Below, piece by piece: positions 4,443 to 35,900 of a stretch of 64,000 nt of DNA. This DNA comes from Fimbriosthenelais zetlandica (Eukaryota). The notes beneath the pieces were generated by a model. That model saw nothing but the letters and a program-made list of their open reading frames with translations, searched no databases and was not told the DNA's origin. The DNA lies in assembly GCA_977030845.1 (NCBI GenBank), contig OZ365115.1:11098001-11162000 (forward strand). Reading direction: 5' to 3'. How positions within the stretch are numbered: the first letter of the stretch is position 1; the number at the start of each line of letters is the position of its first letter. Both the position numbers and the translations under genes were made by a program.

Positions 4443-7400
4443 ATGTCAACTGGGGCCAACCACACTAACGGCCTCATGCCTGCTGAACGTGTAGCCATCC
4501 TAGACGCCGGCGCCCAATATGGAAAGGTATTTATTAACGTGTAACATTATTTGAGAGTTGCCGGTATCTATTTAATTTTGTTATAAATCTTTTAATCATA
4601 TTTAATCCCTCATCCAGGTCATTGACCGGCGCGTCAGAGAGCTGAGCGTTGCTGCTGAAATCTTGCCCCTGGACACACCTGCTCAGATGCTCAAAGACCA
4701 AGGTTTCAAGTAAGAAAATAACCTTAAATGTGAATAAATTGCAAAATAATTCTTACGAAATTCCTTCCTTACTGATAACTTACCTCACTATAGCCGCAGT
4801 CACTTCGTATAACGCCATGTTATAATTGGTGCCATTTGTACTGTTTCATGTTTAAATATATTTAGAAATCTCATCTAATATTTTGTTTCTAGGGCTATCA
4901 TCATATCTGGTGGACCAAGCTCAGTGTATGCTGCAGATGCGCCCTCCTACGACCCTCAGATCTTCCGATGCGGCCTGCCTCTCCTCGGAATCTGCTATGG
5001 CATGCAGGTATACCAGTCTTCCTTTATTTCCTTCTCCCTAATAATGAACATAATCCCTAGTGGTATATTTCGCTCAGTTACTCTGTCAAATACCCTTTCA
5101 TTCACACATACTATATTGTAATTATTTTTAAATTATAGATTGAATAATTCAAGTAATGAAATATTACATTCAAATTCTGTTTTAGATGCTGAACAAGGAA
5201 TTTAGTGGCACGGTACATCGTTCAGAGGGGCGGGAAGATGGACAGTTTACTATACAAGTGGAAACAAAGTCACCACTTTTCAAGTGAGTTTTTTTTTTAT
5301 ATTTTAACAACTTGGACCTACAATGGATTATATAATTATCTTTGATTGGCCTTTATCGTTGATTTGGACTTATATTAAATCGATGGAAAATTAGATTATT
5401 AACCCTTTTTCTACATGTGTAATATGTTTTCAGGGGACTGAAGAAGGAGCAGAATGTCCTACTGACACATGGAGACAGTGTGGATAAAATTGGCAAAGAT
5501 CTTAAAGCCATCGCCCACTCCGGTAAAGTTATAGCAGGTGAGCACTGACAATATTATATGTTTACTAAATGTGAGGGTACCGGTACTACACCCGTCAAAT
5601 AAGACTGTGAAAAAGTGTTCACTTTTCAGAGGTGTCAGACAGTTAATAAAGATTGACTGTTGTCATTGCAGGCATCGCTAATGAGAAGTTAAAGTTGTAC
5701 GCTGTTCAGTTCCACCCCGAGGTGGACCTGTCAGATAACGGGACGGCCATGATGAAGAACTTCCTGTATGAAGTGGCTAAATGTAAGGGTACCTACACCA
5801 TGAAGTCACGAGAAGCTGCATGCCTCAAATATATCAGAGAAACGGCCGGAGACCACAAAGTTCTCGTGAGTAAACGATTTTCATTATAGAAAATAATTAA
5901 AAAATTAATTCCATGTAATAAAACTAGGATATTATAGCCAAGGATGGTATATAGCTCTGGAGAAAAAGTTTCTTTGTTCTTTAATTTAAGGAAAGCTCTA
6001 AGGTTGTTGCTGTCGTTTCCCTCCAGTGTTGCTAATCGGGTTATGAATTCAGCTTGACTGTGTGTGTTATTTGTGTTATCTAGATGTTAGTCAGTGGCGG
6101 TGTGGACTCTACCGTCTGTGCTGCGCTCCTCCATAAGGCCCTTAAAGAGGACCAGGTCGTGGCTTTACACATCGATAATGGCTTCATGCGCAAAGACGAG
6201 AGCCATAAAGTCTTCGAAAGTCTACAAAATATTGGCCTTAAATTAAGAGGTAACCCATAAATTTAAGTACATGTATTTTGGGGCAATTTTGTGATTAAAA
6301 ACTTCGTCTTTTTTTAATGTTTACAGTATTACAATTCCATATCTAAAAGGATTATTAAAAAAAATCAAAATCACTGCTTATTTTGAAACAATGTACCCTT
6401 TACACAATTATCCATGGAATTTTATTGTACTAATTTATAGGATTTACTAAATTAAAATGATTAATTAATTGAAAGAATTTTCCAGGGAACTCTTGATGCA
6501 ATTTCTTATATGTGTTTCAGTCCATTTACTCACAGACAATTTTATTTTACAGCTGTAAATTCAGCCCATACCTTCTATAATGGAACAACTAACATCCCTC
6601 TAGACAGGTCTGATCCCACCTCGCGGAAACGTAAATCTAAACCCCTCAACCAGACCTGTAACCCCGAGGAGAAACGGCTCATCATAGGCGACACCTTCAT
6701 GAATGTAAGTTATTTTTGCGTCATAAAAATTGCTACCCATTTTCCCCATTATTTCGGGCACTGCTATAGCTACAACTCGCCTCCAAGCTACTACCCTACA
6801 CTGGAACCGACCGCTGCTATAATAGTTCCTGGTTGAATATTGCTATTTCATTTGTTACAGGTTGCAAATGAACTAATTGAGGAATTGAATCTCAGACCAG
6901 AGGATGTATACCTAGGACAAGGTAAAATAGTTTTATTTGATATGCAAATTTATGAAATTTCTTTATGCAAATCTGATAGGATGTGCTTCACGGTAAAAAG
7001 CCTGTATATTTTCTTATGTGGTATAATTGGCTCTCGTATTTGTAGGTACATTACGCCCAGATTTAATAGAGAGTGCTTCAGAATTAGCCAGTAACAAAGC
7101 GGAAGCCATTAAAACCCACCACAACGACACAGACCTGGTCCGCGAACTCCGCAAACAGGTAGGTCACTTCTTCATACGGGGAATTGATTTTTGTGTAAAT
7201 TTGTTTATTTTAAAAACGAAGTATGCTGCATCCGAAAACTATTCTATAAATTATGACCATATATAAGACCGTCTTGAATTTTAGAGGTGTTTAGAGGTGT
7301 TCTGACGTCAGAGGCGTCTACTCATGGAGGTTTGACTCTTTCTCTATTCCAGGGCCGGGTAGTGGAACCACTGAAGGACTTCCATAAGGATGAGGTTCGT

Positions 7401-9728
7401 GTGATAGGTAAGGACCTGGGTTTACCTGTAGAGCTGGTTCAGCGTCATCCGTTCCCTGGACCTGGTCTAGCTATCAGGATCCTCTGTGCTGACGAGACTT
7501 ACATGGAGAGAGACTACGCCGAGACGTGTATTCTACTGAAAATTATCACAGACTATGTTAACGCCGTCAAAAAGGTCAGTTATTTTTAGGATTAGGTGAT
7601 TTGGTTATTGTGTTATTTAAAAAAAACATATATATCGTGTAGGGTTTTACGTGTATTAAAAAAAAAATTAAATTGTTGTAACTCAGACCAATTTATGTCC
7701 TGGAAAAATCCTGGACTAGACCTGAAAGCTTAGTCCTTAGCCCTCTCAACAATTATTCCAAATTATTCCCATTTCCATCTTCATCCATTCCCATCTGTAA
7801 AGACTTATAAACAGTATAAACCTGCCGTGGAAATTATATGCTATTGTCCTAGATATGTCCTGGACATTTGTGGAACCACCTCAGCACATACCTTTCACCT
7901 TTGCCTGAAATGTGTTCCTCATAATCAGCAGAAGCTGTGATGAGTATGTTGTTTTGTTCTAGCCTCACGCCTTGTTGAGCCGGGTACGGAATGGTACTAG
8001 TGAAGCAGAACAAGCCTTGTTAACCTCCATCAGTTCTAATGACGATCTTATAGCTACACTCCTCCCCATCAAGACAGTCGGCGTCCAGGTACATACACAT
8101 CTATTTAATATCCTTTTTAATTTTGTTTATAATTAAACATACAGCTTTCATTCAATATTAAACGTGCAAATATAGGTTCACTGAACATCCTTGGATGCTT
8201 GTACCATGATCTTCCACCTATCACTGATATTTCATAAACCCTAAACCATTATGTCCTTACATAAAGGAAAACTTTTTAAAACACCCCTTTTAATTAGGTT
8301 TCAGTGTATTTATCATTTGTATCTTCCCACAGGGAGACTGTCGGACGTACAGTTATGTAGCAGCACTCTCTTGTGATCAGAATCCTAACTGGAGCAGCCT
8401 GGCCACACTTGCCAAGATCATCCCCAGTGTCTGTCACAATGTTAATAGGTTTGTTCACTCTTCATTTCTCTCATTGCTATAGACTCTATAGATTAGTAAA
8501 TCTTCCATCTAGTGAATACTACTCGGAAAATCTTCTAGTATTCTATAATCATAGGAATCTGTATACGAGACCTCAAGAACTTGGGACTTCGTTAATCTGA
8601 GAATACGTTCTGAATAGACTAGATTTTCCTAATTAAATATAGCAAAATTCTTACTAAGTACATGCTATGTATAGCAAGATTACTTCTAATGAATTACTAT
8701 TGTATCAACATAATGTATTGCATCCAGCCTTATGGCCCAAACTAATGCTTATTTTGAATGACGAAAATACAAAATGAGGGTCCCGCACACCTGCTGGAGT
8801 TGTTAACATGTTCTCTTTTCTGTATGTAGGGTGGTGTTCGCCTTTGGTGGGGCTATTAAGGAACCAGTCCAGGACATCACGCCCACCCTCCTAACCCCGG
8901 GTGTGCTCTCCAAACTCCGCCAGGTCGATGCTGTGGCCAACAAAGTCCTCCACGACACAGGTAATTTACCCAACAATTAATGTGTTTTGAGTTAGTGTTA
9001 ACTTTCTGTGTTCTCATGGAGCTAATGGCCAATATTAATATTGGACAAATACCGAATATATAGCTGAAAGTACCAGAATCAGTTGCATATTATCCCCCTG
9101 AAAATATAAATTTTTGCTGTAGTATTTAGCTGTAAAGGAAGTTTAAAGTATTGTAAAGGAAGTTTTAAAATCCTTGGACTAAATTTTATCCATAATTGAC
9201 CAAAATAATTTCTGTCAGGCCATGATCACAGCCTATGTCCTCTTAGCTTCTGATATGCTTGGATGAAAGGATTTGATGTAAGATGTTTATTAAATATTTG
9301 TTCTCCACCACAGAGTGCTCGGGGAAGCTGAGTCAGATGCCTATCGTCTTGATCCCGCTACATTTTGACCGGGATCCTAGCCAGCACATCCCCTCCTGTC
9401 AGCACTCAGCTGTCATCCGTACATTCATGACACATGACTTCATGACAGGCACTGCTGCCATACCAGACAAACACATCCCCTCACAGGTAATTATAAATCA
9501 TCAAAATAGCCCTCTATTTTTCACATAATTGAAACCGAGACTGTGACACATCGTTATAAACCCTTTTTTAATTAATTAAAGGTTTAAATTTTAGCGTATG
9601 AAATATATATTGTTGTTTTATTTCAGGTGGTAGCTAAGATGGTAGAGGAGATGCTGAAGGTTCAGGGCATCTCACGAGTCTTATACGATCTCACATCTAA
9701 ACCTCCCGGGACCACGGAGTGGGAATAA
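4443..9728 (+). CDS. GMPS: GMP synthase [glutamine-hydrolysing], 16 exons, 682 aa
   Basis: Exons 4443-4526, 4618-4709, 4893-5007, 5186-5283, 5434-5537, 5672-5865, 6084-6249, 6553-6704, 6861-6921, 7046-7158, 7353-7574, 7963-8088, 8333-8448, 8830-8960, 9314-9486, 9627-9728 (2049 nt, in phase). Hallmark motifs: [24 protein letters not shown] (catalytic Cys), [14 protein letters not shown] (PP-loop), [23 protein letters not shown]-terminal [14 protein letters not shown]. Confidence 0.98.
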
Positions 9729-11884
9729 CAAATCTAGCCTCCCTAGCCATTTATCACATTGAGTTAAAATCACTTCTAGTTACCTGTAGATAAAATGTCA
9801 TTCAGAATGGAAACATTCAGTGATGCAAATTCCAGGCAATTGGCAAATTTAAGATTTTACACTTCAGCCGGATCTAAATTACAGAAAGCTGTTTTTTAAT
9901 TTCACAGAATTTCTCTACAATGAGGAATCTCTAGAATGAGAAAGTCCATGGGCTATCAGAATGAATTAACAACAAATTGTCATTGATATTTAGAATTAAT
10001 ATTTTGTGAAATTTTCCCCCAAATATGTGATTTGTCATTGCCTGATTTGCATGGTTGGGTTGTGTACATGTATAACCCTATATCTGGGGTGCATAGGTCC
10101 ACTTGATTCAAGAGGTGGCCCTATACATGAATTAATTTTTTTGGGTTTAATATTTGTAGTTGTTGGGAAGAAAGGAATTGAGGGGCAGCTGGTGGGAATG
10201 GGCATTGCCATGGATGGGGGAAGGAGTGGGTGGCCGGGGGTCGGGTGGCGAAACGGGATTGAGTGTTAAAACTGTGACATATTCTACGACTGTGAAATGC
10301 TCTCTTATTTGATTTGATTAATGAAAAATCGCGGAAATAACAGTGAAAATGATTTGTATTCTTAAGGTTTTATATATTTTCCATGTATTCTATTTGTTGT
10401 TTTAGGATTTTCTGTTGAGGGTGTGTCAAATGTAGGTACCCGTTTCACAAGAGTAAACTAAGAGCCGATTGAGAAACAGGTCCGGGATTGAGTAGTTTTT
10501 TGGTGAAAATTAATGTATAATTTAATTGTTTAATATGACAGCGAAACTTCCCAGTGTTATGTATAGGTAGAGTGACTCTGAGTCATACTGTAGTAGTAAA
10601 GGAATATAACAGATCTGACAAACTTTCACTATAGTAACTATGATACATTATGGAGTAGAAGAAGCACAGGCAAATTACAAATAATAGTAAACACTCTGTA
10701 TAATGAATAATTTTAGGACTGAGGAAAGGTCCTGGTCCTATATCATGGAAGTGTTCCCTTATCAGATGGGGCCTCATCCAACCTCAAAAACTTGAGACTG
10801 AAAGTGCATCGACAACTTTGGGGATAATTATCGAGTGGCTAAACTTTAGGTCTTAATTTCGATGGTTTCCCATCTATTTGGCATGTTATCTTGTTGGCAT
10901 GTTTCATTCTGTTACATAAATATGTTTCTGACTTTTCCTACCTGACGGACGTAGCCTGCAGGGTTTTCTATTTCAGGATATAGCCACTCGGGTATTATCC
11001 CCTAAATGGAAGTGCTCACTAAACTGAGGTTTTTGCTGTAATTAAATATTAGAATATAATTTATACCAACCGTAAAAGGTGGTTTTCTTGGAAATTTTCT
11101 TTTGCTAATTTTAAAATATATTTAAAGACAGCATGAACATGATGTTTTTCAACTTAACTTGCTTGACGTACAATTTGCCGTACGTGAGTGATTTTCAGTG
11201 TTTATTATGATTTATATATATGACATTTCTTTTCATGAAAAAAAATCTTAATTCTTGCAGCTGTGTGTGCTCCTCACTTGCGTTTGTAAATATATTATAT
11301 AACCGATAGCTGACTATGTAAAACCGGTGATCCCTTTGAGGATTTCGATATTTTTCATTCCCCAATCGATATTTTGTCAGTTCTCTGTGTTTTTTTAATT
11401 AAAGAGATCTCGAATTAATGTAAACGTGATGTATACATCATGAATGTCTAATACTAAATACTGATGTGTTTCTAACATAATTCCACATTGTAATCTGGTT
11501 TCTAGTTCAAAAAAACTTGGGAATAGTTTCCAAATTTTACACCAGTACATTAAAAAAAATACGAAAATAATAAATATTTAGATCTCACCTCACTTTCGGT
11601 GTTCCAGGATCTGTTTTTCTTTCAATAAAATACATGTATATATATTTGAATTTCAATTCAATTTAGTGTTATATCAGTATTTCTTCATACGTTGTAAATA
11701 GATTCTCTCGCGTTCTAGGCCTTGTGATATGTTGTACACCAGCAGGACAACCGGGCAGTCAGTGGCGCAATGACAGGCGGAAGTATGCGAGCGCCTGGCC
11801 CTGGCAGCTGCGCAATGAAGCATGAGACGTAGCTTGATCCATAGAACTAGTTCTATGCTTGATAATAGCAGAATAGGTCATCCT

Positions 11885-11952
11885 TCTGCCATTAGTCTAG
11901 AGGCAAGGCACTGACATTCAACGTGAGCGACCGGGGTTCAATTCTCCGTCGA
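11885..11952 (+). mobile_element. tRNA-derived (SINE-type) Pol III head, degenerate
   Basis: ttagtctagaggcaagg (A-box-like) ... gaccggggttcaattctccg (B-box/T-arm); acceptor and anticodon stems do not pair. Confidence 0.65.
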
Positions 11953-12163
11953 TTCAAACGTTTTTCTGCTCCATGGGTCGCTCGGCCTACACATTTATTT
12001 GATGACGGTGAGCCTTCTTCAGCGACCTCACCGAGCACCCCTAGCGCCACCTGTACCACCAGGCGGGAACCAAGCTATGATAGCTGCTGCTATCTAAAAG
12101 ATCCCTTCCCCAATGAACACTACTCAGCTATATGTGTAGCGATCCAGCTGCGAAAAGGGATTT

Positions 12164-12235
12164 ACAAGACGGGGAATCGAACCCCGGTCTCTCTCGTTAC
12201 AGGCCAGTGTCTTACCTCTATAGACTACCTGGCTC
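12164..12235 (-). mobile_element. tRNA-derived Pol III head, opposite orientation
   Basis: Reverse complement tagtctatagaggtaagac...gagaccggggttcgattccccg; the 3' part matches the metazoan tRNA-Asp T-arm region. Confidence 0.7.
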
Positions 12236-12877
12236 ATATGTCTCAGCCTTACACTCCGTCAAATTTAACCTAAACCGCCCAGGACAGAGCCCCAACCTCC
12301 AACCCAAACAGTAAAGCTATTTTGGTTTCATGCTTCATTGCGCAAGTGCCCGGATCAGGCGCTCGCATACTTCCGCCGCTCCCGACTGGAATCAAGCTAA
12401 ACATGAAATAGAGGAGGGTGTCATTTTCCGTCGGACAAGGACTTGAACAATCTGTGTCACGACTCTGATTTCGAAAATGTTTAATATCTCGGCAACCACT
12501 GGGTCTTTTTAAGAAATTCAAAATGGAAAATCTTAGTTGGGACAATGTCTAGCGGGTGGTATAGGAAATAAATGCTGAAACTGCTTCTAAAAATTTCGAT
12601 TTTCAAAATGTAGCCAATTTCACAAGTTGTCCCGACTCCAGCTCCGTTTCCAATCCAAGGCTCCGATCTCAGCTGAAAATCCGGCACAGTGGCGCCCTCA
12701 GGTGGTGAGTGGAGGTAGGCCTATATGACGATTAGCGCAGAGGCCTGGGGTCTGTAGCGTCTGTTGTTAGAAGCTCTATAGTATACCAGTGTAACAAATA
12801 TGCTACACAGGGGCGCCCTCATGTGGGGGATGGTAGACTTAGGCGAGGAGGCGAAGCTTGTCCCTCGATCATTGTCA

Positions 12878-13056
12878 TAGTAGCATAGGACCAAGCCAGC
12901 GCGGCTGTAGCGCACCCGAGATATGATGCGGCAGAACGCTGAACTATGCTACTATAGTAGGCCTATTGAACTCTATGACTTCTATGGAAGGACCAAGCCA
13001 GCGCGACTGTAGCGCACCCGAGATATGATGCGGGAGAACGCTGAACTATGCTACTT
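12878..13056 (+). repeat. ~67-bp direct duplication in the spacer; first copy bounded by 11-bp inverted tagtagcatag/ctatgctacta
   Basis: ggaccaagccagcgcg(g/a)ctgtagcgcacccgagatatgatgcgg(c/g)agaacgctgaactatgctact occurs at ~12888 and ~12990. Confidence 0.8.
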
Positions 13057-13454
13057 ATCGGAGCCTTGCATTGGAAACGGGGCTGGAGTCGGGCCAACTT
13101 GTGAAATTGGCTACATTTTGAAAATCGAAATTTTTAGAAGCCGTTTCAGCATTTATTTCCTATACCACCCTCTAGACATTGTCCCAACTAAGATTTTCCA
13201 TTTTGAATTTCTTAAAAAGACCCAATGGTTGCCGAGATATTAAACATTTTCGAAATCAGAGTCGCGACACAGATTGTTCAAGTCCTTGTCCGACTGAAAA
13301 TGACACCCTCCTCTATCTCATGTTTATCTTGATTCCAGTCGTGAGAGGCGGAAGTATGCGAGCGCCGGGCCCTGGCAGCTGCGCAATGAAGCTTGAGACC
13401 TAGCTTGATCATATAGGCCTAGGCCTATACATGTAGCCTACCATTCTTCATGGT

Positions 13455-13522
13455 TCTGCCGTTAGTCTAGAGGTAAGACGCTGGACTGTAACGTGAGCGA
13501 CCGGGGTTCAATTCACCGTCAA
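13455..13522 (+). mobile_element. tRNA-derived Pol III head (second module)
   Basis: gttagtctagaggtaagacgctggactgtaacgtgagcgaccggggttcaattcaccg; D-arm gtct/agac pairs. Confidence 0.7.
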
Positions 13523-13738
13523 TCCAATCATTTTTCTGCTCCACGGGTCGCTCTGCCTACACATTTATATGATGACTGTGAGCCTTTTTCTGCGACCTCA
13601 CCGAGCACCCTTAGCGCCACCTGTACCACCAGGCGGGAACCAAGCTATGATAGCTGCTGCTATCTAAAAGATCCCTTCCCCAATGAACACTACTCAGCTA
13701 TATGTGTATACATGCGATCCAGCTGCGAAAAGGGATTT

Positions 13739-13808
13739 ACAAGACGGGGAATAGAACCCCGGTCTCTCACGTTACAGTCCAGCGTCTTACCTCTAGACTA
13801 CATGGACC
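13739..13808 (-). mobile_element. tRNA-derived Pol III head (second module, opposite orientation)
   Basis: Reverse complement tagtctagaggtaagacgctggactgtaacgtgagagaccggggttctattccccg; D and T stems intact, acceptor stem broken. Confidence 0.7.
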
Positions 13809-16800
13809 ATATGTCTTACAGATTCAATAAACACAGTAAACCTATTTTGGTCTCATGCTTCATTGCCCACCTGCCTTGGTCAGGCGCTCGCATACTTCCG
13901 CCATTCCGCCAGACCTATTTGTAGAGCCGTGACTCTGAAATGTAGACATGGGGATTGGGGTGAAAGTTGGGGGCCGGGGAGGGGTGCGGGGGGCAAAATA
14001 ATTATGAACATTGTGATTTAGCTTTGTCCGGGCGGTTCAAATATGAAGGGGTGTAGGCCTAGTGTTGCCGAGGGTAGGGGGTCATCGGAAGGCATAACAA
14101 AATTCAGGTGCCCTGTGGTCATCGTGGTGACTTGAGGGCACCACAAGATTCCCACCAGTATGGATCTGGCCAAAGGTTGTGCCATTGGGGTTGTTTTTCT
14201 CCCATCAAAAGAATGTTAAAACATGATTTTTTTTGTATAAAATATTTTATTACCGTACTTTTTTCCCCTTACATATTAGAAACAATGTCCTACAATGCAA
14301 TGGAATGGTTGCTACATTTAGGCTAATATTATTTGCAACTATCACTACTTGGCCAAGCCTATCTATGATCTATCTAGCCTATCTCCTACATTTAGGCCTA
14401 CAACAAAGATATCATTAGGCTACAAAACATGTTTTTTTTTGTTTTATTACATGCTCACCACCTGGCCGGTGTTTTAATTCCTAAATGAGATTCTTCACTT
14501 GTTTTCAGCCAGATCTCTGTTCAAAGTGATTAGACCTTTAGTGAATTCAAGCATAAGCCTAATTTAAATATAGAATTATTAGATATAAAGTTGGCCAGTG
14601 CTTCAATATATTGAGGCATAACATTACTTCTTCGCTGTAGGCTAGCCTACGAATAAACGAAAAAGAGACAAATGGACTATTTATCAAATAAAAACATTCA
14701 AGAAAATCTCCATACTTCTCATGGATTTCCCTATCCAAAGTTCCTAAAATATAAAAAAGATATCCTAAATAATATCAAAAAAACATATTATTCCCTAATA
14801 GAAGAAATATATATAATCTGAAATAGGGTCAGGCCTAATATGTATAATTAGTTGCAGTGAGGCATAAACATAAATTGGATGCTAGAGTGATAACTTAAAA
14901 ACTCGACTCATTGAAACATAAAAATTAATTCAATTTTCAACATTGTCTTAATTTAAGTGGATGCGAGAGTAACAATAGTTTTACTTAAACGCTCCCTTTA
15001 GAGTTAGAAGTTCAGTGAAATTTCCTAACAGAGTCGCCCAACAAATTGAGATATGGGCTTATTGTACTAGGAATACAAATTCTTAGGTGCTTGGTGCAAA
15101 TACAAACACACTGCATCACAAATTGCTTCCTAATAGATTGTCAAACCTAGTATTGTCCTAAGGTTGGTTCACTCAATCCGCTGTCATTTCCCCTCATCCT
15201 CCTCTCTACCATTTTGTATAGATTATATACTGGCTAAGATATTAATGTAAAAGTGCTCATCTTCCTACAATACCAACTGATTTTGCATTCACATATTTGA
15301 ATTATAGAGATATGATCACAATTGATAGGAAAGACAAAAACACCACTTTGTATCCACGTTTATATCTGCCACATCTTTAATTACGAAATGTTATATGAGG
15401 AAACTTCAGAACTTTTCATTTCAGGAAACTTCAGGTTGCTTTGGTAGTTGATTTGATATCTTGGAATGTGGTTCTTATTCTTTCACCATCCAAAGTTGAT
15501 TTAATAAAGATTTGGCAGACTTTAAGAAGTACAAATGTTCAATCGATTTACGTGCACATGTCTTGCTTAAATACAGTAACTTCTACAACAGTATGCATGC
15601 ATTCCATTTCAACGCGCTATTAAATTGCTTCCTTGTACATTTCCTAGCCCAGAATCTCATTAGCCAAATATACCTGAACAATTTGGTTGTAGCATCTCTA
15701 GAAATATAGGTGTCAAAAATACATTATCTTTTACCCATTATCTATGCCTTTATATCAATTTATTATGATGGCCCCAGTTGTTTTTTTAATATTATTTTAA
15801 CATCTGTGATTTCCAATATACTTCATGGTAAAATCTCGTGGCAATAGATCTACTATATTATTAAGACTGGTTTTATGTACATCAAACTTGTCCACATAAA
15901 ACTGTGCACTTTGCTCACAATCACAACATTTTAAGCCTGTTCACATAGGACCGATAAAACACATCATATCTTAGATATGTGATGAGAAGGTGTTATCACC
16001 GAACCATTACTTATACTCAAGAACTGGAATTATTCCTAAAGTTCCACAGTTTAGTAATCCACACAAGTTTTTGTTTCAGTTACGGTTAGGCCTCTAAATG
16101 TTATTACATTCACACACGTGGGTATATTATACACATGTGCATATATATGAATCAGTATAGGATGTATGAATAGTCATATCTATGTACACATTTCTATTAT
16201 AATTACTCCCGATTTAGCACTGCAAATCAAGTACATCATGATCATATTTACATTAGGAATACAAACGATTCAAATAAATTCGAAGAAAAATATCATTTGA
16301 AGACTTTTAACCCATATCAGGATAATTCAACCAAGTATAAGTTTTTCATGAATATGAATAAACTGATGAATATACATAATAATATCTACAAAATAATTTT
16401 GTTAGAAACAGCATTGAATGCCTTGACGTTAAAGACATTCAATGCAGCGTCATCACCTCGAATGACACTAATATAAGAGAACTAATATAATACACATAAC
16501 TGAGTTAACAATGCAATTAATGGTCAACGTGGAAGCCCATGTGATTGAATTGAAAATAATTAGTCATATATACACTTTTCCAGTGATATTTTCTTCATAT
16601 ATTCTTCACATCTGCCCAGGAAACAAAGGGAATGTACATAATACAAACTATAATTCAGACTCTGGGAATAATTCCTAATAGGAACCGTATTTGTCCCCGA
16701 TTAATTGGTAGGTTAAAGATGTGGTATCATCAGAGACAAACAAGTTGTAGGAATTGGGACATGGAATTTTGATTTCAACCCTGGAAAGGACATTCAAGAA

Positions 16801-17961: not shown

Positions 17962-20900
17962 TCACAGGTCGATCCTGCTTGATAATCTACGTTGTAGCCT
18001 GGTGATCTCGTAAGCCGTACCAATAGACCTGGTAGAGGAATGTCGGTGTCTGCCGGTCGTCTTGTACCGGGTATAACCTGGTATACCCACCACGGTGGGT
18101 TTGTAGAAAGCAAAGGCGAAGTACTCGGTGGGTTTGAGTTTGGATGGCGTAAGTGGCATGGCTGCTACTGGCGTACCAGGAGGGGCGTACCGACCCCATT
18201 TGTCCTCGTCTTGATGAGGCCCCCATTCTTTGGTAGGTTTCATCACTTTTATTAAAAGCTGAAAAATACAATGGTAATTTTCATTCATTATTTTATGCAG
18301 ATAGAAGACGGGAAGAAATTCAGAAAATATTATAGGATGACTAGTGATAGCACAGGCGAAGTATTTGTTATTCGAAATATTTTTCACATTTTGGTAATAT
18401 CCATGGAGAAGATCCTTGAAATTCAACACATATCTCTTTTTTTATATTGTAAATGTTTTAAAATTTGAGTAAAATTTAATGAAAAAGCTTCTTACCCTGG
18501 CGCCGCCCATGGCACAGTAGTTGTAAATGAAGAAAATAACGATGAGCATTATCGGGAACATGGCGATGAGCCAGCCCAGGGCCTGGGCCCAGCCTGGGTA
18601 GAAGTAGTCACTGAGACTGGGGGGCTTGTAATAGGCTATGTTAAATAATATAGTGGCCAGGATGATACAGGGGGTTAGCCCCATCCAACTGATCTTCCAG
18701 TACCAGTTGGGCTTCTTACCCAACATCATGGAAATGTCATCAGCAAAGTTGTTATAACCTGGAAATATAAACGAAAGTAGTTATTAACTCCATAAATTAT
18801 ATTTATTACTGACATAATGTAAAGTAATAAAATGTAAATGAGGATAATCCCATACCACTGGCAACATATAAGATGATGTATTAGATATATTATTATAGAT
18901 TAATTCCATAACATTATATTCATTACCAACATGAATATATATGAATATATATATATTATATTAATATCAAATAACGATTATATTAAACAAAAATATGCAA
19001 ATTATATAAAATTTAGGGGACGTACCGTAGATCCAGTTGAGCACGACACATTCTAGGAAGCCCACAAGGAGGAGGGGGAATCCTGACACTGAGTAATCCA
19101 CTAGATTGAGTAGGTAGATGCCACCCCTGGTCACCATAGGCAGACCCAGGAGGAAGGAACACAGAATCACACAGACACGGAAGATGAGGTTACGCCACTT
19201 GGTCCTCAGGTGCTCATTGAACTCATCAGAGAAGGCACTGAGTACACACTCCACCAGCGAGAACTGAAATACAACAATCATAGGTTACAATAGTAACAGC
19301 TGAAACTTACTACTCATATACAGGGCCATTCAAAAGTTATGTAACACAGGATACAGATACCCTAGTTTATCTACTCAATCAGTTACATTGTATTATGTAT
19401 CTTTCTTTCAGATTCGGTGATAACATCAGAAGAATGTGTATACTTTCACATAATAATTATTAATATATAATATTGAAAAGGGCACAAGACTATAGGGCAT
19501 ATCAACAGCATAAGAGTACATTCTCTGGATTAAATCCGATTGATTGATAGATTGATGGATTGAATGATTGATGGATTGGTTTAGTAAGGATATAATTCAT
19601 GCCACTAACCTGCGAACCGAAGCCAAGTGTGGCCATCATGAAGAAGAAGAATATGGCCCACAACTGCGGGGCGGGCATTCTGGACAACGCCTCAGGGTAG
19701 ACGACAAACGCCAGACCAGGCCCTCCCGCGGCCACATCCTGCACCTTTTAAAAAGAACAAAAGAATTAACACATCAATTTGTGTTAATTGCAAACAGCTA
19801 AATTTTAAGCCATGATTATTTAGTGTTGCGGATGTAGTGCTTATTAAACGTTGCAAATACAGCGCTTATTATCTGTACCATTGTGACCACTCAGTAGCCG
19901 CTTAATAAACACTGCATGCCTAAAAATGTTGCCTAATATTCTGTGCACACCGCGGTCCCACTTAATCAACAAAAACTGCTCTCAGCTATTCTTTCAATTA
20001 TTTTTCTAATCTTTCAAAATTAAAATCATCCATCGGAAAGAGACCTTGGGAACATTCAAGTAAACACTTATTTCTATTTTGGTTATGTTCTTCAGTTCTC
20101 ATCAGGAGCTGTACCTAATATTTTCCCCATCCATTCATAAAACCCCGGGTAGGTTAAATTACCATCTCAAGTCACCTACCTCCACACCTTTTTCCGTAGC
20201 CATAAATCCAAGCACTGCGAAGATGACAAATCCAGCGAAGATGGATGTACCACAGTTTATCATGGATACAATAAGGGAGTCTCTCAGACAATTATTGTTA
20301 AATTTACTGTAGGACGACATGCAGATTAGACCACCACAGCAGGCAGACAGCGAGTAGAAGATCTGAGTTGCTGCATCACACCACACCCGGGCGTCACCCA
20401 GCCTGGAGAAGTCAGGTTTGAGGTAGAATATGATGCCTTTAGATGCTCCGGGAAGAGTAGCTCCACGGATGAGCAAAATAGTGAGCATGACATAAGGGAA
20501 GATGGCGGTGAAGTACACCACCTTGCCTAAAGATTGAATGCCCCGGATTAAGCAGATTAAGACGATAATCCATGCCAGGAGGAGGCATAGAGCAAGCTTC
20601 CAGTTGACACCTCCAGATTCATGGATTCCAGATGACATCTCCAGAACAAAGTTACTGTAAAAAATAAAATGATTTTATAGAAATTAAAATTCAATATTTG
20701 ATCAGATGAAGCAGTGTCCCTACAACTGGTCTGATTTGACAGATATTAAGGACTTTACTGTCAGACTTGTAAAACCAAAAATAAAGAAAGTACATAGTGT
20801 ATCTTTGCCTTCCTCCACCGTCTGCGTACAGTATTGTATAGATCCATGTCTTTTTCTGAGTTTTTGAGAGTGTAGACTATACTTATAATAATATATATAA

Positions 20901-32900: not shown

Positions 32901-35900
32901 GTACTGCCTCTAGAACCAGTCTACTGGGGTCATTACAATCTTACTGAAGCCAGTAGTAACTCTAGATAAAACTGTCCCTTCCTATTTGGAACTATGACCA
33001 CCAGAGAACTACCAGGGACATCAGAAATAATTTACCATGCATACGTTTGTTGCTTCCTTGACATACACCTGTCTCTTGCAGCATATTTGGTCATTTGGTT
33101 TCAAGGCTTTTGAACAAAGTTTACATGTTAACTTCAAAGATGAATCTCTCATTTCCGTTATTTCTGATATTTCCACATCCTCTGAATGTTTTTTTTCCAC
33201 TTTTGTTTCACAAAGTTCTAAACTGAAATTTTGGTTTCTCTGTATTAACAGATATTGCAAACCTATATTTGGCTTGGCCGATGGCAAATGCTCATAAGAC
33301 GAAGACACTGTCAATGTAATGCACAGTACTCGTCTCTTTTGTAAGGACAGGACCATTGAAAGGTCCACCATAAAGCTTTTAAGACTGATGAACACCGTTC
33401 CCCCATATAGGAGCGTCTTCCATGGAATGTTCCTTTAGGCCAGTCACCCGTAGATAACAAAGATGTACCTACAAAAAACATTCCTGACACATTGGATGCC
33501 TTCTGAGACAATCTATATGGCACTGTAAAAATATGCAATCTACAAGATCTTCGAAAGATAAACGATTTTATAAGTGTAGGCATAAGTGTAGGCATAAGTG
33601 CTTTTAGCTAAAAATTGGGAGGGAAAATCGGGCCATTTTGGTCCCATGAGATGTAGTGACATGTCGGTTTTCCATTGCATGTCCGAGCAGCAATTGGCAA
33701 TTATAGCATCACCACTATGATTAATAACAGAGTGGGTGTCTGGCCCTNNNNNNNNNNNNNNNNNNNNNNNNNNNNNNNNNNNNNNNNNNNNNNNNNNNNN
33801 NNNNNNNNNNNNNNNNNNNNNNNNNNNNNNNNNNNNNNNNNNNNNNNNNNNNNNNNNNNNNNNNNNNNNNNNNNNNNNNNNNNNNNNNNNNNNNNNNNNN
33901 NNNNNNNNNNNNNNNNNNNNNNNNNNNNNNNNNNNNNNNNNNNNNNNNNNNNNNNNNNNNNNNNNNNNNNNNNNNNNGAGAGGGAGATTGGAGTAGATGG
34001 CCAGGGAGGGAGAAAGAGCGAGAGGATAACGAGATGGATATACAAAAGAGATGAGAGAGAGAAAGATAATAAAATAAATAGTATGTGCCTTGTTATCTCT
34101 TCACAACTACATAGTGCTAGATAGGCAATCATGTGATAGTCATCTCATAACATATCTAACTCCATTAACCCCTTCTTTCGCGTCATTTCCCCGTCATCAT
34201 AATGTTATATTAGATATTAGTCCCCTCTGACGCTCTGGGAGGTGAATATTTCAGTAAGTAGGTGGTCATTATGAGCGTATATATGACCGCTCGTGAACCA
34301 ATGAAATCGGCCCTGTTTGACCTAGATAAGCAGGAAGGGTGCTGCTTGTGTGTGTGCATATTAGAGGAGTGTATGTCTGTTTGACCTACATAAGCAGGAG
34401 GGGATGACTGGTCGTGTAGCGGTGGGTAGGGTGAAGTGGGTCATGACTGGAAACATAGCCAGTGAGCGCACAGCCACATACAGGCTTTTGAACAAGGTAT
34501 GACAATGTAAAGAGACACATGAAGGAAATCGTGAATAAAACATGATTTATGGCATTAAAAGTTCTGTATCGATGACAGGTAAGGGGGTTAAATGTGTGCC
34601 GGGGACTAAAGCAATTAGACCCTTTGTTGGTTTCGCGTTCGCCCCGTCTAGTGCGTATATACTCTCGCGCTCACGCGCTCGAGTATATATTTACGCACTA
34701 GACGGGTCTCACGCTTAACCAACAAAGGGTCTATTTGTATAATATATCAACATTGGGTATTTCCCCAGTTTTTAGGCTACATATCTCCCATTTATTCTAA
34801 TGCATTCCTGGCCATATGTCTAAACATTATTGTGAAATGATTACATGACCTTGTCACACACATCTATAGTAGTAGTATGTATTATAATAGGCCTACAGTC
34901 AACTGTGCAACAGAATTTCACTTGCCAATGTCTGCATGAATCAATCAGACAGAAGAAAGATTCTTAGGTTTAAAATACTTGGGTTAGAACCCTGACATAA
35001 TCTAGACAAATTATTGTGCTTTCTTTTCATCCTGGCAGCATCTTTATGCATAGCCAAGCATATCCACATATATCTATGACCTCTATTACCATCTCATATA
35101 ACGGTTCTTTTTATACAGAAACAATCAATTTAATGGATATGGATATTCTCTCCTTCCCTGAGTTAGAGGAAGTAAGATATATAATCTCAGCACACCTTAT
35201 CACGCCAGACTGCTATTCCATCAAGTGTTATACTAATAACATTGGGGCTTCTTTTTCTTAAAGCTGCAGTGACTCAAGCTGCAGTGAATCTCCTAGAATT
35301 GAGACAGAACCAAATATTGTCCTCCCGTCGTGATCTAGATAATATTTATAATCTAAACATTTATATCTATAGACAGAAAAACAAGGTGAACAAGTCGTAT
35401 TTTGGGTTTAACATAACATAGGCATAAGTTATTGTTGTCTATTGAAAATGCTCATCTCACATAATGTCAGCGATGTTATAAGTTTTAGAAGTCACCTCCT
35501 CTCTGGGGGTTAGAGGTGGCTTTGTAATGCATCACCAGTAGCTCCACTAGCAAACACCCATGAGTCTACTTCAGTACCTTCACCAACAACTCATCAGCCT
35601 TTCCTCCTGAAAGTCGAGCACTGTCTGTGATTGTACGTTTGTCCACACATTGCGACATTCTGCTCCTGACATGCAAGCAAACAGTTACCAACATTGCTTG
35701 AGTTAAACCAATAATGCCTGGCCTTCCAATGGGAGCAGAACCGTGCACAAGGAGGAGCTCAGTGAGGGGCTCAAGGGAGGGTATCAGCCATTACTCCAAT
35801 GCTCAGATATCCCGGTGAATCCCAATGACTTTGTCACTGCAAGACTTGAGCCATGGACGTATATATATGGGCAATTCATATTGCTTCAGAGTATATTGGA

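What the first reader, a model, noticed from the sequence alone, without database searches (positions are those of the whole stretch)
11775..13905. 2.1-kb nested palindrome/tandem array: X-T-core-T'-X' | Y-spacer-Y' | X-T-core-T'-X'
Two ~600-bp modules, each bounded by its own inverted repeats, are direct repeats about 1570 bp apart. They are joined by ~300-bp near-perfect inverted arms around a ~385-bp spacer. Apart from the cores and spacer, the whole region is self-complementary at three scales. Remnants of Y beyond the last X suggest a truncated tandem array of two alternating fold-back modules. I know no standard TE class with this layout. It lies between the convergent 3' ends of GMPS and SLC6.
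Basis: seen in the sequence. Interest (0 to 1): 0.75.

Follow-up and report, generated by a model that had tools for sequence, protein, structure and literature searches.

The report
Mosaic array of tRNA-tipped foldback repeats
The 2.1-kb nested palindrome between two animal genes is real. It is a patchwork copy of a non-coding, hairpin-shaped repeat family found hundreds of times in this genome, whose arm tips carry worn tRNA-Asp-like mini-genes, and nothing yet shows that it is a new class of mobile element.

Summary
Window 11771-13907 holds two ~600-bp modules as direct repeats 1570 bp apart, joined by 344-nt inverted arms (94%) around a 389-nt spacer.

It is not a one-off. The arm (Y'+X) junction occurs about 340 times in the genome. 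The tRNA-like module T occurs about 1,190 times. The same order of parts recurs at five or more other loci.

T derives from tRNA-Asp. Its A box, B box and T-run are conserved islands, while its acceptor stem and trailer have decayed.

The simplest parse is one structure: arms (Y'-X-linker-T) in alternating orientation, separated in turn by a "core" loop and a "spacer" loop. The window holds one full foldback plus two partial arms.

The two modules are not fresh tandem copies. Most of their segments, and the two arms, have closer relatives at other loci, although they share a 136-nt identical tract (gene conversion).

Ten block edges show no shared termini and no target-site duplication (TSD). 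The claimed Y remnants are not supported; a different module (U) and a 57-nt dispersed repeat flank the array.

No sequencing runs were listed, so misassembly could not be tested with reads. The scan had already noted this family elsewhere in this genome.

Verdict: a new variant of the foldback/modular-repeat kind. How it spreads is unresolved.

The parts
11716..11772 (+). E57: an unrelated 57-nt dispersed repeat that abuts the left edge of the array
   Evidence: The own-genome search gave 171 candidate places, and all 42 hits outside the window end at window 11772. It is absent from the 26 sampled family loci.
11771..11839 (+). X, module A1. This is the outer part of a partial arm and has no Y' attached.
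   Evidence: Direct repeat D4 and inverted repeats I6/I7. All-against-all coverage puts the repeat boundary at 11771.
11890..11973 (+). T1: tRNA-Asp-derived module of subtype a, followed by a run of five T
   Evidence: nhmmer profile hit; Rfam tRNA 21 bits; alignment to the genome's own tRNA-Asp.
11974..12147 (+). Core 1: the non-palindromic loop between the convergent T modules. It is made of the downstream tails of T subtypes a and b.
   Evidence: 77 candidate places genome-wide.
12148..12231 (-). T1': tRNA-like module of subtype b, with a perfect B box and a TTTT run after it
   Evidence: Rfam RF00005 scored 31.5 bits against a gathering score of 29, over model positions 1-71. ARAGORN called no tRNA.
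12308..12667 (+). Left arm of the complete foldback (X' 12308-12382 plus Y 12383-12667)
   Evidence: Inverted repeat I1. Y has 479 candidate places at 95-98% identity. This arm falls in a different clade from its partner arm.
12668..13056 (+). Spacer loop. It is asymmetric, with a 67-nt subrepeat present twice (12887-12953 and 12989-13055).
   Evidence: Direct repeat D5. Only the first ~90-107 nt and the subrepeat are common in the genome; the middle is rare.
13057..13410 (+). Right arm of the complete foldback (Y' 13057-13341 plus X 13342-13410)
   Evidence: Inverted repeat I1. Its nearest relatives are the subtype-a arms at C25:9.78 Mb, C21:19.88 Mb and C21:23.89 Mb.
13459..13542 (+). T2: tRNA-like module of subtype a
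   Evidence: It is 94% identical to copies at three other loci but 87% identical to T1.
13543..13722 (+). Core 2
   Evidence: 94% identical to core 1. It contains the right-hand copy of the identical tract.
13723..13804 (-). T2': tRNA-like module of subtype b
   Evidence: Rfam tRNA 28.5 bits.
13833..13907 (+). X', module A2. This is the outer part of a partial arm and has no Y attached.
   Evidence: Direct repeat D3 and inverted repeats I6/I8. Similarity to the arm family ends at 13902.
12042..12177 (+). A 136-nt tract identical to 13612-13752 apart from one 5-nt indel. It lies inside modules that otherwise differ by 6-13%, so it looks like a local gene-conversion tract.
   Evidence: Pairwise alignment of A1 and A2; identities by segment.
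13942..14056 (+). U module: a G-rich family-associated segment that normally lies upstream of subtype-b T modules. Here it sits 40 nt beyond the last X' and no T follows it.
   Evidence: 760 candidate places genome-wide. Its position upstream of T in the sampled loci is shown.

Best explanation
The region is a 1.36-period, mosaic excerpt of a genome-wide, non-coding, modular foldback repeat family.

Anatomy. The building block is an arm of about 480 nt: Y' (285 nt), X (69 nt), a linker, and a tRNA-Asp-derived module T followed by a T-run. Arms lie in alternating orientation. They are separated in turn by a 'spacer' loop at the Y ends and a 'core' loop at the T ends. The window therefore reads: partial arm (X-T), core, full foldback (T'-X'-Y, spacer, Y'-X-T), core, partial arm (T'-X').

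Shown here:
- the anatomy itself;
- that it is repeated across the genome;
- that T derives from tRNA-Asp;
- that the composite order recurs at other loci, with arms more alike by position than by locus, so the composite is copied as a unit;
- that the left and right halves of the window copy descend from different sub-lineages and later exchanged a 136-nt tract.

Inferred. The family spreads as DNA, as excerpts of variable length. Either a transposase mobilises it in trans, or it spreads through repair-templated or circular-DNA reinsertion. It is then reshuffled by recombination and gene conversion, which the long inverted arms promote through hairpin or cruciform formation. The T modules are not working tRNA genes. 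Their Pol III boxes and terminator are selectively conserved, so they probably still bind TFIIIC/Pol III. No role at this locus is shown.
For: Anatomy.

Abundance. The whole region gave 1409 candidate places. Y gave 479 candidates at 95-98% identity. The Y'-X junction 28-mer occurs 339 times and the X 20-mer 309 times. The T A-box 19-mer occurs 1186 times, against 7 for the reversed control.

Same order at other loci. The order and relative orientation recur at C25:9.78 Mb, C21:19.88 Mb, C38:12.84 Mb, C25:7.22 Mb, C21:23.89 Mb and others.

Origin of T. The T consensus matches the genome's own tRNA-Asp at 52 of 71 positions, and the 3' half at 84-89%. The flanks of real tRNA-Asp genes are unrelated.

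State of T. Across 67 copies the D stem is 94% paired, the T stem 87%, the anticodon stem 77% and the acceptor 59%. Mean pairwise identity is 92% for the A box/D arm, 82% for the B box/T arm and 87% for the T-run, against 48-53% for the acceptor, the trailer and the sequence beyond.

Mosaic origin of the window copy. A1 and A2 are 87% identical in T and 87% in X'. Yet A1's T is 96% identical to a copy at C25:2.73 Mb, A1's X' is 98.6% identical to one at C25:14.6 Mb, and A2's parts are 94-97% identical to C25:9.78 Mb, C21:19.88 Mb and C38. The two arms fall in different clades, with SH-aLRT 87 and 94. Only 12 of 39 arms have their nearest relative in the same locus.

Other points. The core is flipped relative to the spacer in 2 of 11 loci. 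Pfam found no family in the ORFs that overlap the array.
Against: - No TSD and no shared terminal sequence was found at the edges of 10 complete blocks, so cut-and-paste transposition is not demonstrated.
- No autonomous partner was sought successfully.
Those loci were the best hits to this window, so the sample is biased towards its own subfamily.
- Clade supports are moderate (SH-aLRT 80-94, none starred for the key clades).
- The conservation of the Pol III boxes may be partly a detection bias of the profile search.
- No reads or RNA data were available.
Confidence: 0.7

Rival explanations
1. Compound transposon. Two X-bounded, MITE-like modules (X-T-core-T'-X') flank a passenger (Y-spacer-Y') and move together as one 2.1-kb unit. 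It would be cut at the outer X ends, like an IS-flanked composite transposon.
For: The arm-family similarity stops exactly at the outer X ends on both sides (11771-11776 and 13902), in inverted orientation. Each module folds as a hairpin.
Against: X is almost never free. There are 309 X ends against 339 Y'-X junctions genome-wide, so X belongs to the arm and is not an independent terminus. No TSD flanks the 2.1 kb. No other locus has the same bounds. The flanks are themselves other repeat modules, E57 and U.
Confidence: 0.08
2. Local tandem duplication. A single 1570-bp unit was duplicated in place by unequal exchange or replication slippage, as in a young satellite, and the copies have since diverged.
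For: Direct repeats with a 1570-bp period. A 136-nt identical tract. Elsewhere, adjacent direct units are 98-99% identical, as at C25:9.78 Mb and C19:20.41 Mb. TE dimers are known seeds of arrays (PMC5932611).
Against: T, X', the linkers and the arms of the two halves each have much closer relatives at other loci than in the partner module. Linker l2 differs by a 48-nt indel, and each form is shared with other loci.
Confidence: 0.15
3. Functional Pol III or TFIIIC element cluster. The four tRNA-like units would be the point of the structure. They might make ~90-nt transcripts or act as TFIIIC-bound boundary elements between two convergent genes, with the palindromic DNA serving as their carrier.
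For: The A box, B box and T-run are islands of conservation (82-92% identity, against 48-53% for the acceptor, the trailer and the sequence beyond the T-run) across T subtypes whose linkers and tails have diverged widely. The cloverleaf arms are largely kept. One unit passes Rfam's tRNA threshold.
Against: There are about 1,190 copies, spread like a repeat family. The four window copies have broken anticodon and acceptor stems. ARAGORN calls none of them. No expression data could be obtained. A bias of the profile search towards conserved boxes cannot be excluded.
Confidence: 0.12
4. Assembly artefact: a falsely duplicated or inverted join in a hard-to-assemble palindrome.
For: Palindromes and repeat arrays are prone to misassembly, and no reads could be laid on the region.
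Against: The copies differ by 6-13% plus indels outside one 136-nt tract. The same architecture is assembled independently at five or more other loci.
Confidence: 0.03

Closest known systems
Tetris, a foldback transposon of Drosophila virilis (PMC4079207), and Drosophila Foldback elements in general
   Same: Non-coding and apparently non-autonomous. Long inverted arms built from modules. Many rearranged forms. Parts of the element amplify into tandem arrays.
   Different: Tetris arms hold ~220-bp internal tandem repeats, and it shares defined terminal sequences with a MITE (DAIBAM). Here the arms carry a tRNA-Asp-derived Pol III-type module at the tip. No defined termini or TSD were found, and the array alternates arm orientation instead of repeating a sub-unit head to tail.
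Galileo, a P-superfamily element of Drosophila with long, internally repetitive TIRs (PMC3573991)
   Same: Long, structurally dynamic inverted repeats, with extensive recombination between copies.
   Different: Galileo has a transposase-coding autonomous form and a superfamily assignment. None was found or assignable here.
tRNA-derived SINEs
   Same: A tRNA-derived module that keeps its A and B boxes while the acceptor stem and anticodon decay. High copy number.
   Different: In a SINE the tRNA head lies at the 5' end and is transcribed together with the body. Here a T-run stops transcription about 15-20 nt after the tRNA-like part, and the module points away from the arm. The arm cannot be part of a Pol III transcript, and there is no SINE-type tail.
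Tandem dimers of transposable elements as seeds of satellites (McGurk and Barbash, PMC5932611), and MITEs that contain tandem repeats in bivalves (DTC84, PMC3879986)
   Same: Short arrays of mobile-element-derived units dispersed in gene-rich DNA. Adjacent direct units at some loci are 98-99% identical.
   Different: The unit here is itself a kilobase palindrome with two different loops. The window copy is a chimera of two sub-lineages, not a fresh dimer.
Bacterial BIMEs: REP sequences in alternating orientation (PMC2817692)
   Same: A purely topological resemblance: regularly spaced palindromic units in alternating orientation with two kinds of intervening sequence.
   Different: A different domain of life, scale (tens of bp) and mechanism. 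No homology is implied.

Membership tests
Foldback-type DNA transposon | Long terminal or near-terminal inverted repeats with a short or variable middle | tested here: met
   The Y'-X stretch common to all arms is 344 nt (up to ~480 nt with linker and T). The window pair is 94% complementary. The loops are variable.
Foldback-type DNA transposon | Dispersed multi-copy distribution | tested here: met
   339 arm junctions on at least 10 contigs.
Foldback-type DNA transposon | Defined termini flanked by a target-site duplication | tested here: inconclusive
   No shared termini or TSD at 10 block edges. However, solitary elements, seen as outward-facing T pairs 1.8-2.4 kb apart (one pair 3.5 kb), could not be fetched.
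Foldback-type DNA transposon | An autonomous relative that encodes a transposase | not tested
   No coding capacity in the sampled copies.
MITE (the X-T-core-T'-X' module taken as an element of its own) | Terminal inverted repeats that mark the ends of independently dispersed copies, with a TSD | tested here: not met
   X ends are almost always continuous with Y (309 against 339). No TSD at the window's free X ends.
tRNA-derived SINE | A 5' tRNA-derived head with A and B boxes | tested here: met
tRNA-derived SINE | Body and tail lie downstream of the head and are co-transcribed with it | tested here: not met
   A T-run follows about 15-20 nt after the tRNA-like part in all subtypes, and the arm lies upstream of the head.
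Functional tRNA gene | A complete cloverleaf including the acceptor stem, called by tRNA finders | tested here: not met
   ARAGORN found none. Only one of four units reaches Rfam's gathering score. The acceptor is 59% paired across the family, and the anticodon stems are broken in the window copies.
Satellite or tandem repeat | Head-to-tail units with local homogenisation | tested here: inconclusive
   The window holds only 1.36 periods, and its two modules belong to different lineages. Elsewhere there are two or more units with 98-99% identity between adjacent units. TRF reports no array in the window, since the period lies beyond its 500-nt limit.

The most novel reading that the evidence does not exclude
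The tRNA-Asp-derived tip modules may be working parts of the element and not debris. On this reading the family is a DNA-level foldback repeat whose spread or persistence depends on Pol III/TFIIIC recognition of its arm tips. That recognition might tether or target integration next to other T modules, which would build the convergent T-core-T' junctions and the arrays. Alternatively, the modules might act as TFIIIC boundary elements that the host tolerates between genes. This would be a Pol III-linked class of DNA repeat with no described counterpart.
Probability: 0.12. Interest if true: 0.75.

Novelty: new variant of a known kind. Interest (0 to 1): 0.4.

Why it matters
If the family is simply a lineage-specific foldback repeat, this locus is an ordinary mosaic copy. 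It matters mainly for annotation: about 1,200 tRNA-like hits in this genome are not tRNA genes, and kilobase palindromes between genes are hotspots for rearrangement and for hairpin RNA.

Two features are worth a specialist's attention. The first is the selective conservation of the Pol III promoter boxes and terminator in modules that cannot transcribe the rest of the element. The second is that the composite is copied between loci as excerpts of variable length, without visible termini or TSDs. Together these raise a testable question: how does such a family spread, and does Pol III/TFIIIC binding play a part?

Tried and rejected
- Reads. The look-up of sequencing runs listed no run, so read laying was not used and neither misassembly nor expression could be tested.
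- Genome retrieval. Solitary elements and the other copies of E57 and U could not be read.
- Y remnants beyond the last X were rejected by alignment.
- Origin of the arm from the upstream flank of real tRNA-Asp genes was rejected: only the tRNA's 3' half matches.
- Coding capacity was rejected for the two ORFs tested: Pfam found nothing in one ORF overlapping Y' and one overlapping the core.
- 'Hypervariable linkers mark element ends' was considered after and rejected. Within each T subtype the linker next to T is conserved.
- TSD search at the window edges and at 10 other block edges found nothing consistent.
- An empty paralogous site was sought with the left flank. Instead it turned out that the last 57 nt of that flank are another dispersed repeat.
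- An exact search of metagenome contigs for the arm junction gave no match.
- Two full-text literature searches found no described foldback family with tRNA-derived tips. Only listed titles and abstracts, plus two outlines, were read.
- The organism was not identified. Earlier notes of the scan call the genome annelid-like, and I did not test that.


Full report
**1.

A repeat scan of window 11000-15000 finds four blocks of direct repeats with spacing 1525-1575. They are 11771-11839 / 13342-13410 at 94%, 11878-12138 / 13448-13708 at 91%, 12139-12220 / 13714-13795 at 95%, and 12308-12382 / 13833-13907 at 87%.

The same scan finds a 344-nt inverted pair, 12324-12667 / 13057-13400, 94% complementary and 389 nt apart. 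It also finds the smaller inverted pairs X/X' (53 nt, 87-91%) and T/T' (69-74 nt, 75-86%).

Module A1 (11771-12382) folds as one long DNA hairpin, with z = -10.6 against shuffles. The array is GC-richer (about 50%) than its flanks (about 30%).

The gene context is right. GMP synthase exons on the + strand (7027-7589) match the guaA profiles at rising positions. SLC6/SNF exons on the - strand (18442-19281) match profile positions 363-522 of 524, rising from right to left. The array therefore lies between two converging 3' ends.

**2. What the parts are**

T is a tRNA-derived module. Rfam's tRNA model hits all four copies. The copy at 12162-12234 on the - strand scores 31.5 bits over the whole model, above the gathering score of 29. 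The other three score 21-28.5 bits. ARAGORN calls none of them.

The genome's own tRNA-Asp(GTC) genes were found by pattern search: 148 matches, including a long Gly-Asp-Met tandem array on contig C1. The consensus of 82 T copies matches tRNA-Asp at 52 of 71 positions. The 3' half of the window copies matches at 84-89%. Nothing outside the tRNA matches.

Every T is followed about 15-20 nt later by a run of four or five T. In each module the two T units point towards each other and stop before the core.

Across 67 distinct copies the D stem is 94% paired, the T stem 87%, the anticodon stem 77% and the acceptor 59%. Mean pairwise identity is 92% in the A box/D arm, 82% in the B box/T arm and 87% in the T-run. 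It is only 48-53% in the acceptor, the trailer and the sequence beyond.

**3. It is a genome-wide family, and the parts travel together**

The whole region gave 1409 candidate places in the 447-Mb genome. By part:
- Y gave 479 candidates, 95-98% identical to the window copy.
- The core gave 77.
- For the spacer, only the first ~90-107 nt and its 67-nt subrepeat are common.

Whole-genome pattern counts give 309 X ends (20-mer, up to 2 mismatches), 339 Y'-X junctions (28-mer, up to 3 mismatches) and 1186 T A-box 19-mers (reversed control: 7). X is therefore an integral part of the arm. T also occurs on other arm types.

Segment maps of about 30 fetched loci show the same order, T-core-T'-X'-Y-spacer-Y'-X-T, at C25:9.78 Mb (two full units, period about 1412), C21:19.88 Mb, C38:12.84 Mb, C25:7.22 Mb, C21:23.89 Mb and others. 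Variants have a 2035-bp period (C19:20.41 Mb), other T subtypes with short cores, or a different ~330-nt module ('Z') in place of linker plus T.

The T list also shows many outward-facing T pairs about 1.8-2.4 kb apart. These are probably solitary foldbacks capped by T. I could not fetch them.

**4. The simplest parse**

The two 'modules' and the 'Y-spacer-Y'' unit are one periodic structure. Arms (Y'-X-linker-T) lie in alternating orientation, separated in turn by a spacer loop at the Y ends and a core loop at the T ends.

The core is not an independent unit. It is made of the downstream tails of two T subtypes, a on the left and b on the right, which meet in the middle.

The window reads: partial arm, core, complete foldback, core, partial arm.

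**5. The window copy is a mosaic, not a fresh tandem duplication**

| Segment | A1 vs A2 |
|---|---|
| X | 94% |
| T | 87% |
| left half of core | 92% |
| T' | 94% |
| X' | 87% |

The linkers differ by indels, 48 nt in l2.

Closer relatives sit elsewhere. A1's T and left core are closest to a copy at C25:2.73 Mb (96% and 94%). A1's X' is closest to C25:14.6 Mb (98.6%). A2's T, left core, T' and X' are closest to C25:9.78 Mb, C21:19.88 Mb and C38 (94-97%).

In a tree of 47 arms, the right arm (13057) sits with the subtype-a arms of three other loci (SH-aLRT 87). The left arm (12324) sits in another clade of 17 arms (SH-aLRT 94). The subtype-b arms of four loci form their own clade (SH-aLRT 93). 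Only 12 of 39 arms have their nearest relative in the same locus.

Arms thus resemble arms in the same position at other loci more than their own partner. This means the composite was copied between loci as a unit after its two arms had diverged. It also means the window's left and right halves come from different sub-lineages.

Against this background, 12042-12177 is identical to 13612-13752 apart from one 5-nt indel. At about 8% divergence a run of 136 identical positions has a probability of roughly 1e-5, so this is a local gene-conversion tract.

The core is inverted relative to the spacer in 2 of 11 loci. This is expected if the inverted arms recombine.

**6. Edges**

All-against-all coverage bounds the arm-family sequence in the window at 11771 and 13902. 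Both edges fall at the X/Y junction, which is unusual given the counts above.

There is no TSD, and the flanks do not align to Y. Instead, the 57 nt immediately to the left (11716-11772) are a separate dispersed repeat with 171 candidate places, and every hit ends at 11772. To the right, 13942-14056 is a 'U' module with 760 candidate places. In other loci U lies just upstream of subtype-b T units.

Ten other complete blocks have edges at different points of the unit, with no shared terminal motif and no TSD.

The copies look like excerpts of variable length from a periodic template. This fits repair-templated or circular-DNA reinsertion, or imprecise mobilisation, at least as well as classical cut-and-paste. 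I could not decide between these.

**7. Comparison with known systems**

The closest described kind is the modular foldback transposon that seeds tandem arrays (Tetris, PMC4079207). Also relevant are Galileo (PMC3573991), TE dimers as array seeds (PMC5932611) and repeat-bearing MITEs (PMC3879986).

The T modules resemble SINE heads, but they face away from the arm and terminate at once, so the family is not a SINE.

Two full-text searches found no described foldback family with tRNA-derived tips.

Earlier notes of this scan describe the same 'tRNA-tipped foldback' family at several other places in this genome. My independent tests agree with them on three points: the tRNA-Asp origin, the copy number of about a thousand, and the conserved Pol III boxes.

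**8. Limits**

- No sequencing run was listed, so neither the assembly nor expression could be checked.
The sample is small and biased towards this window's subfamily.
- Solitary elements, E57 copies and U copies were not read.
- Clade supports are moderate.
- The assembly gap at window 33748-33977 was left untouched.

Noticed in passing
G000 contig C1, about 33,259,000-33,312,000 and 32,872,000-32,897,000; loci L035-L038: A large tandem array of real tRNA genes (Gly-GCC, Asp-GTC, Met-CAT per unit). The period is about 1263-1285 bp, with at least 40 consecutive units on one strand.
   Followed up: partly
L029:4881-6533 (G000 C19:35,888,880-35,890,532): A 1653-nt insertion splits a Y arm. It has terminal inverted repeats of about 40 nt that begin CACGGGCATCA. 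It is flanked by an exact 8-bp direct duplication, CATGAAAT. This looks like an unrelated, hAT-like, non-autonomous DNA transposon.
   Followed up: partly
window 11716-11772: A 57-nt dispersed repeat (E57) with 171 candidate places. All hits share the same right end at 11772, while the left ends vary (11716-11733). Some copies occur as direct pairs 115-172 nt apart. At two C19 loci it lies about 1.1-1.3 kb from a U module.
   Followed up: partly
window 13942-14056: A G-rich 'U' module with 760 candidate places, more than the Y arm has. It often occurs as a 72-nt partial copy plus a full copy about 180 nt apart. In the sampled loci it usually lies upstream of subtype-b tRNA-like units.
   Followed up: partly
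G000 contig C2, 179,918-318,544: The Y'-X arm junction recurs eight times on one strand at steps of about 17.0-18.9 kb (one step of 33 kb, i.e. one unit missed). This suggests a ~17-kb tandem repeat that contains one arm of the family.
   Followed up: no
L018 (G000 C19:20,412,000-20,421,999) and L019: A variant tandem array with a 2035-2038-bp period. Each unit has only one Y arm, an ~870-nt segment holding two U copies, a T-core-T' unit and an extra T, so the unit is not a foldback with respect to Y.
   Followed up: partly
L026:8878-9020, L027:9005-9349, L030:7959-8295, L018:5998-6319, L020:9662-9922, L028:7876-8057: A ~330-nt module ('Z') replaces the linker and tRNA-like tip on some arms. 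This gives a second arm type with the same Y'-X core.
   Followed up: partly
window 13896-13911: An exact 8-bp tandem duplication, TTCCGCCA TTCCGCCA, straddles the right edge of the last X'. It may be a microhomology footprint of the junction.
   Followed up: no
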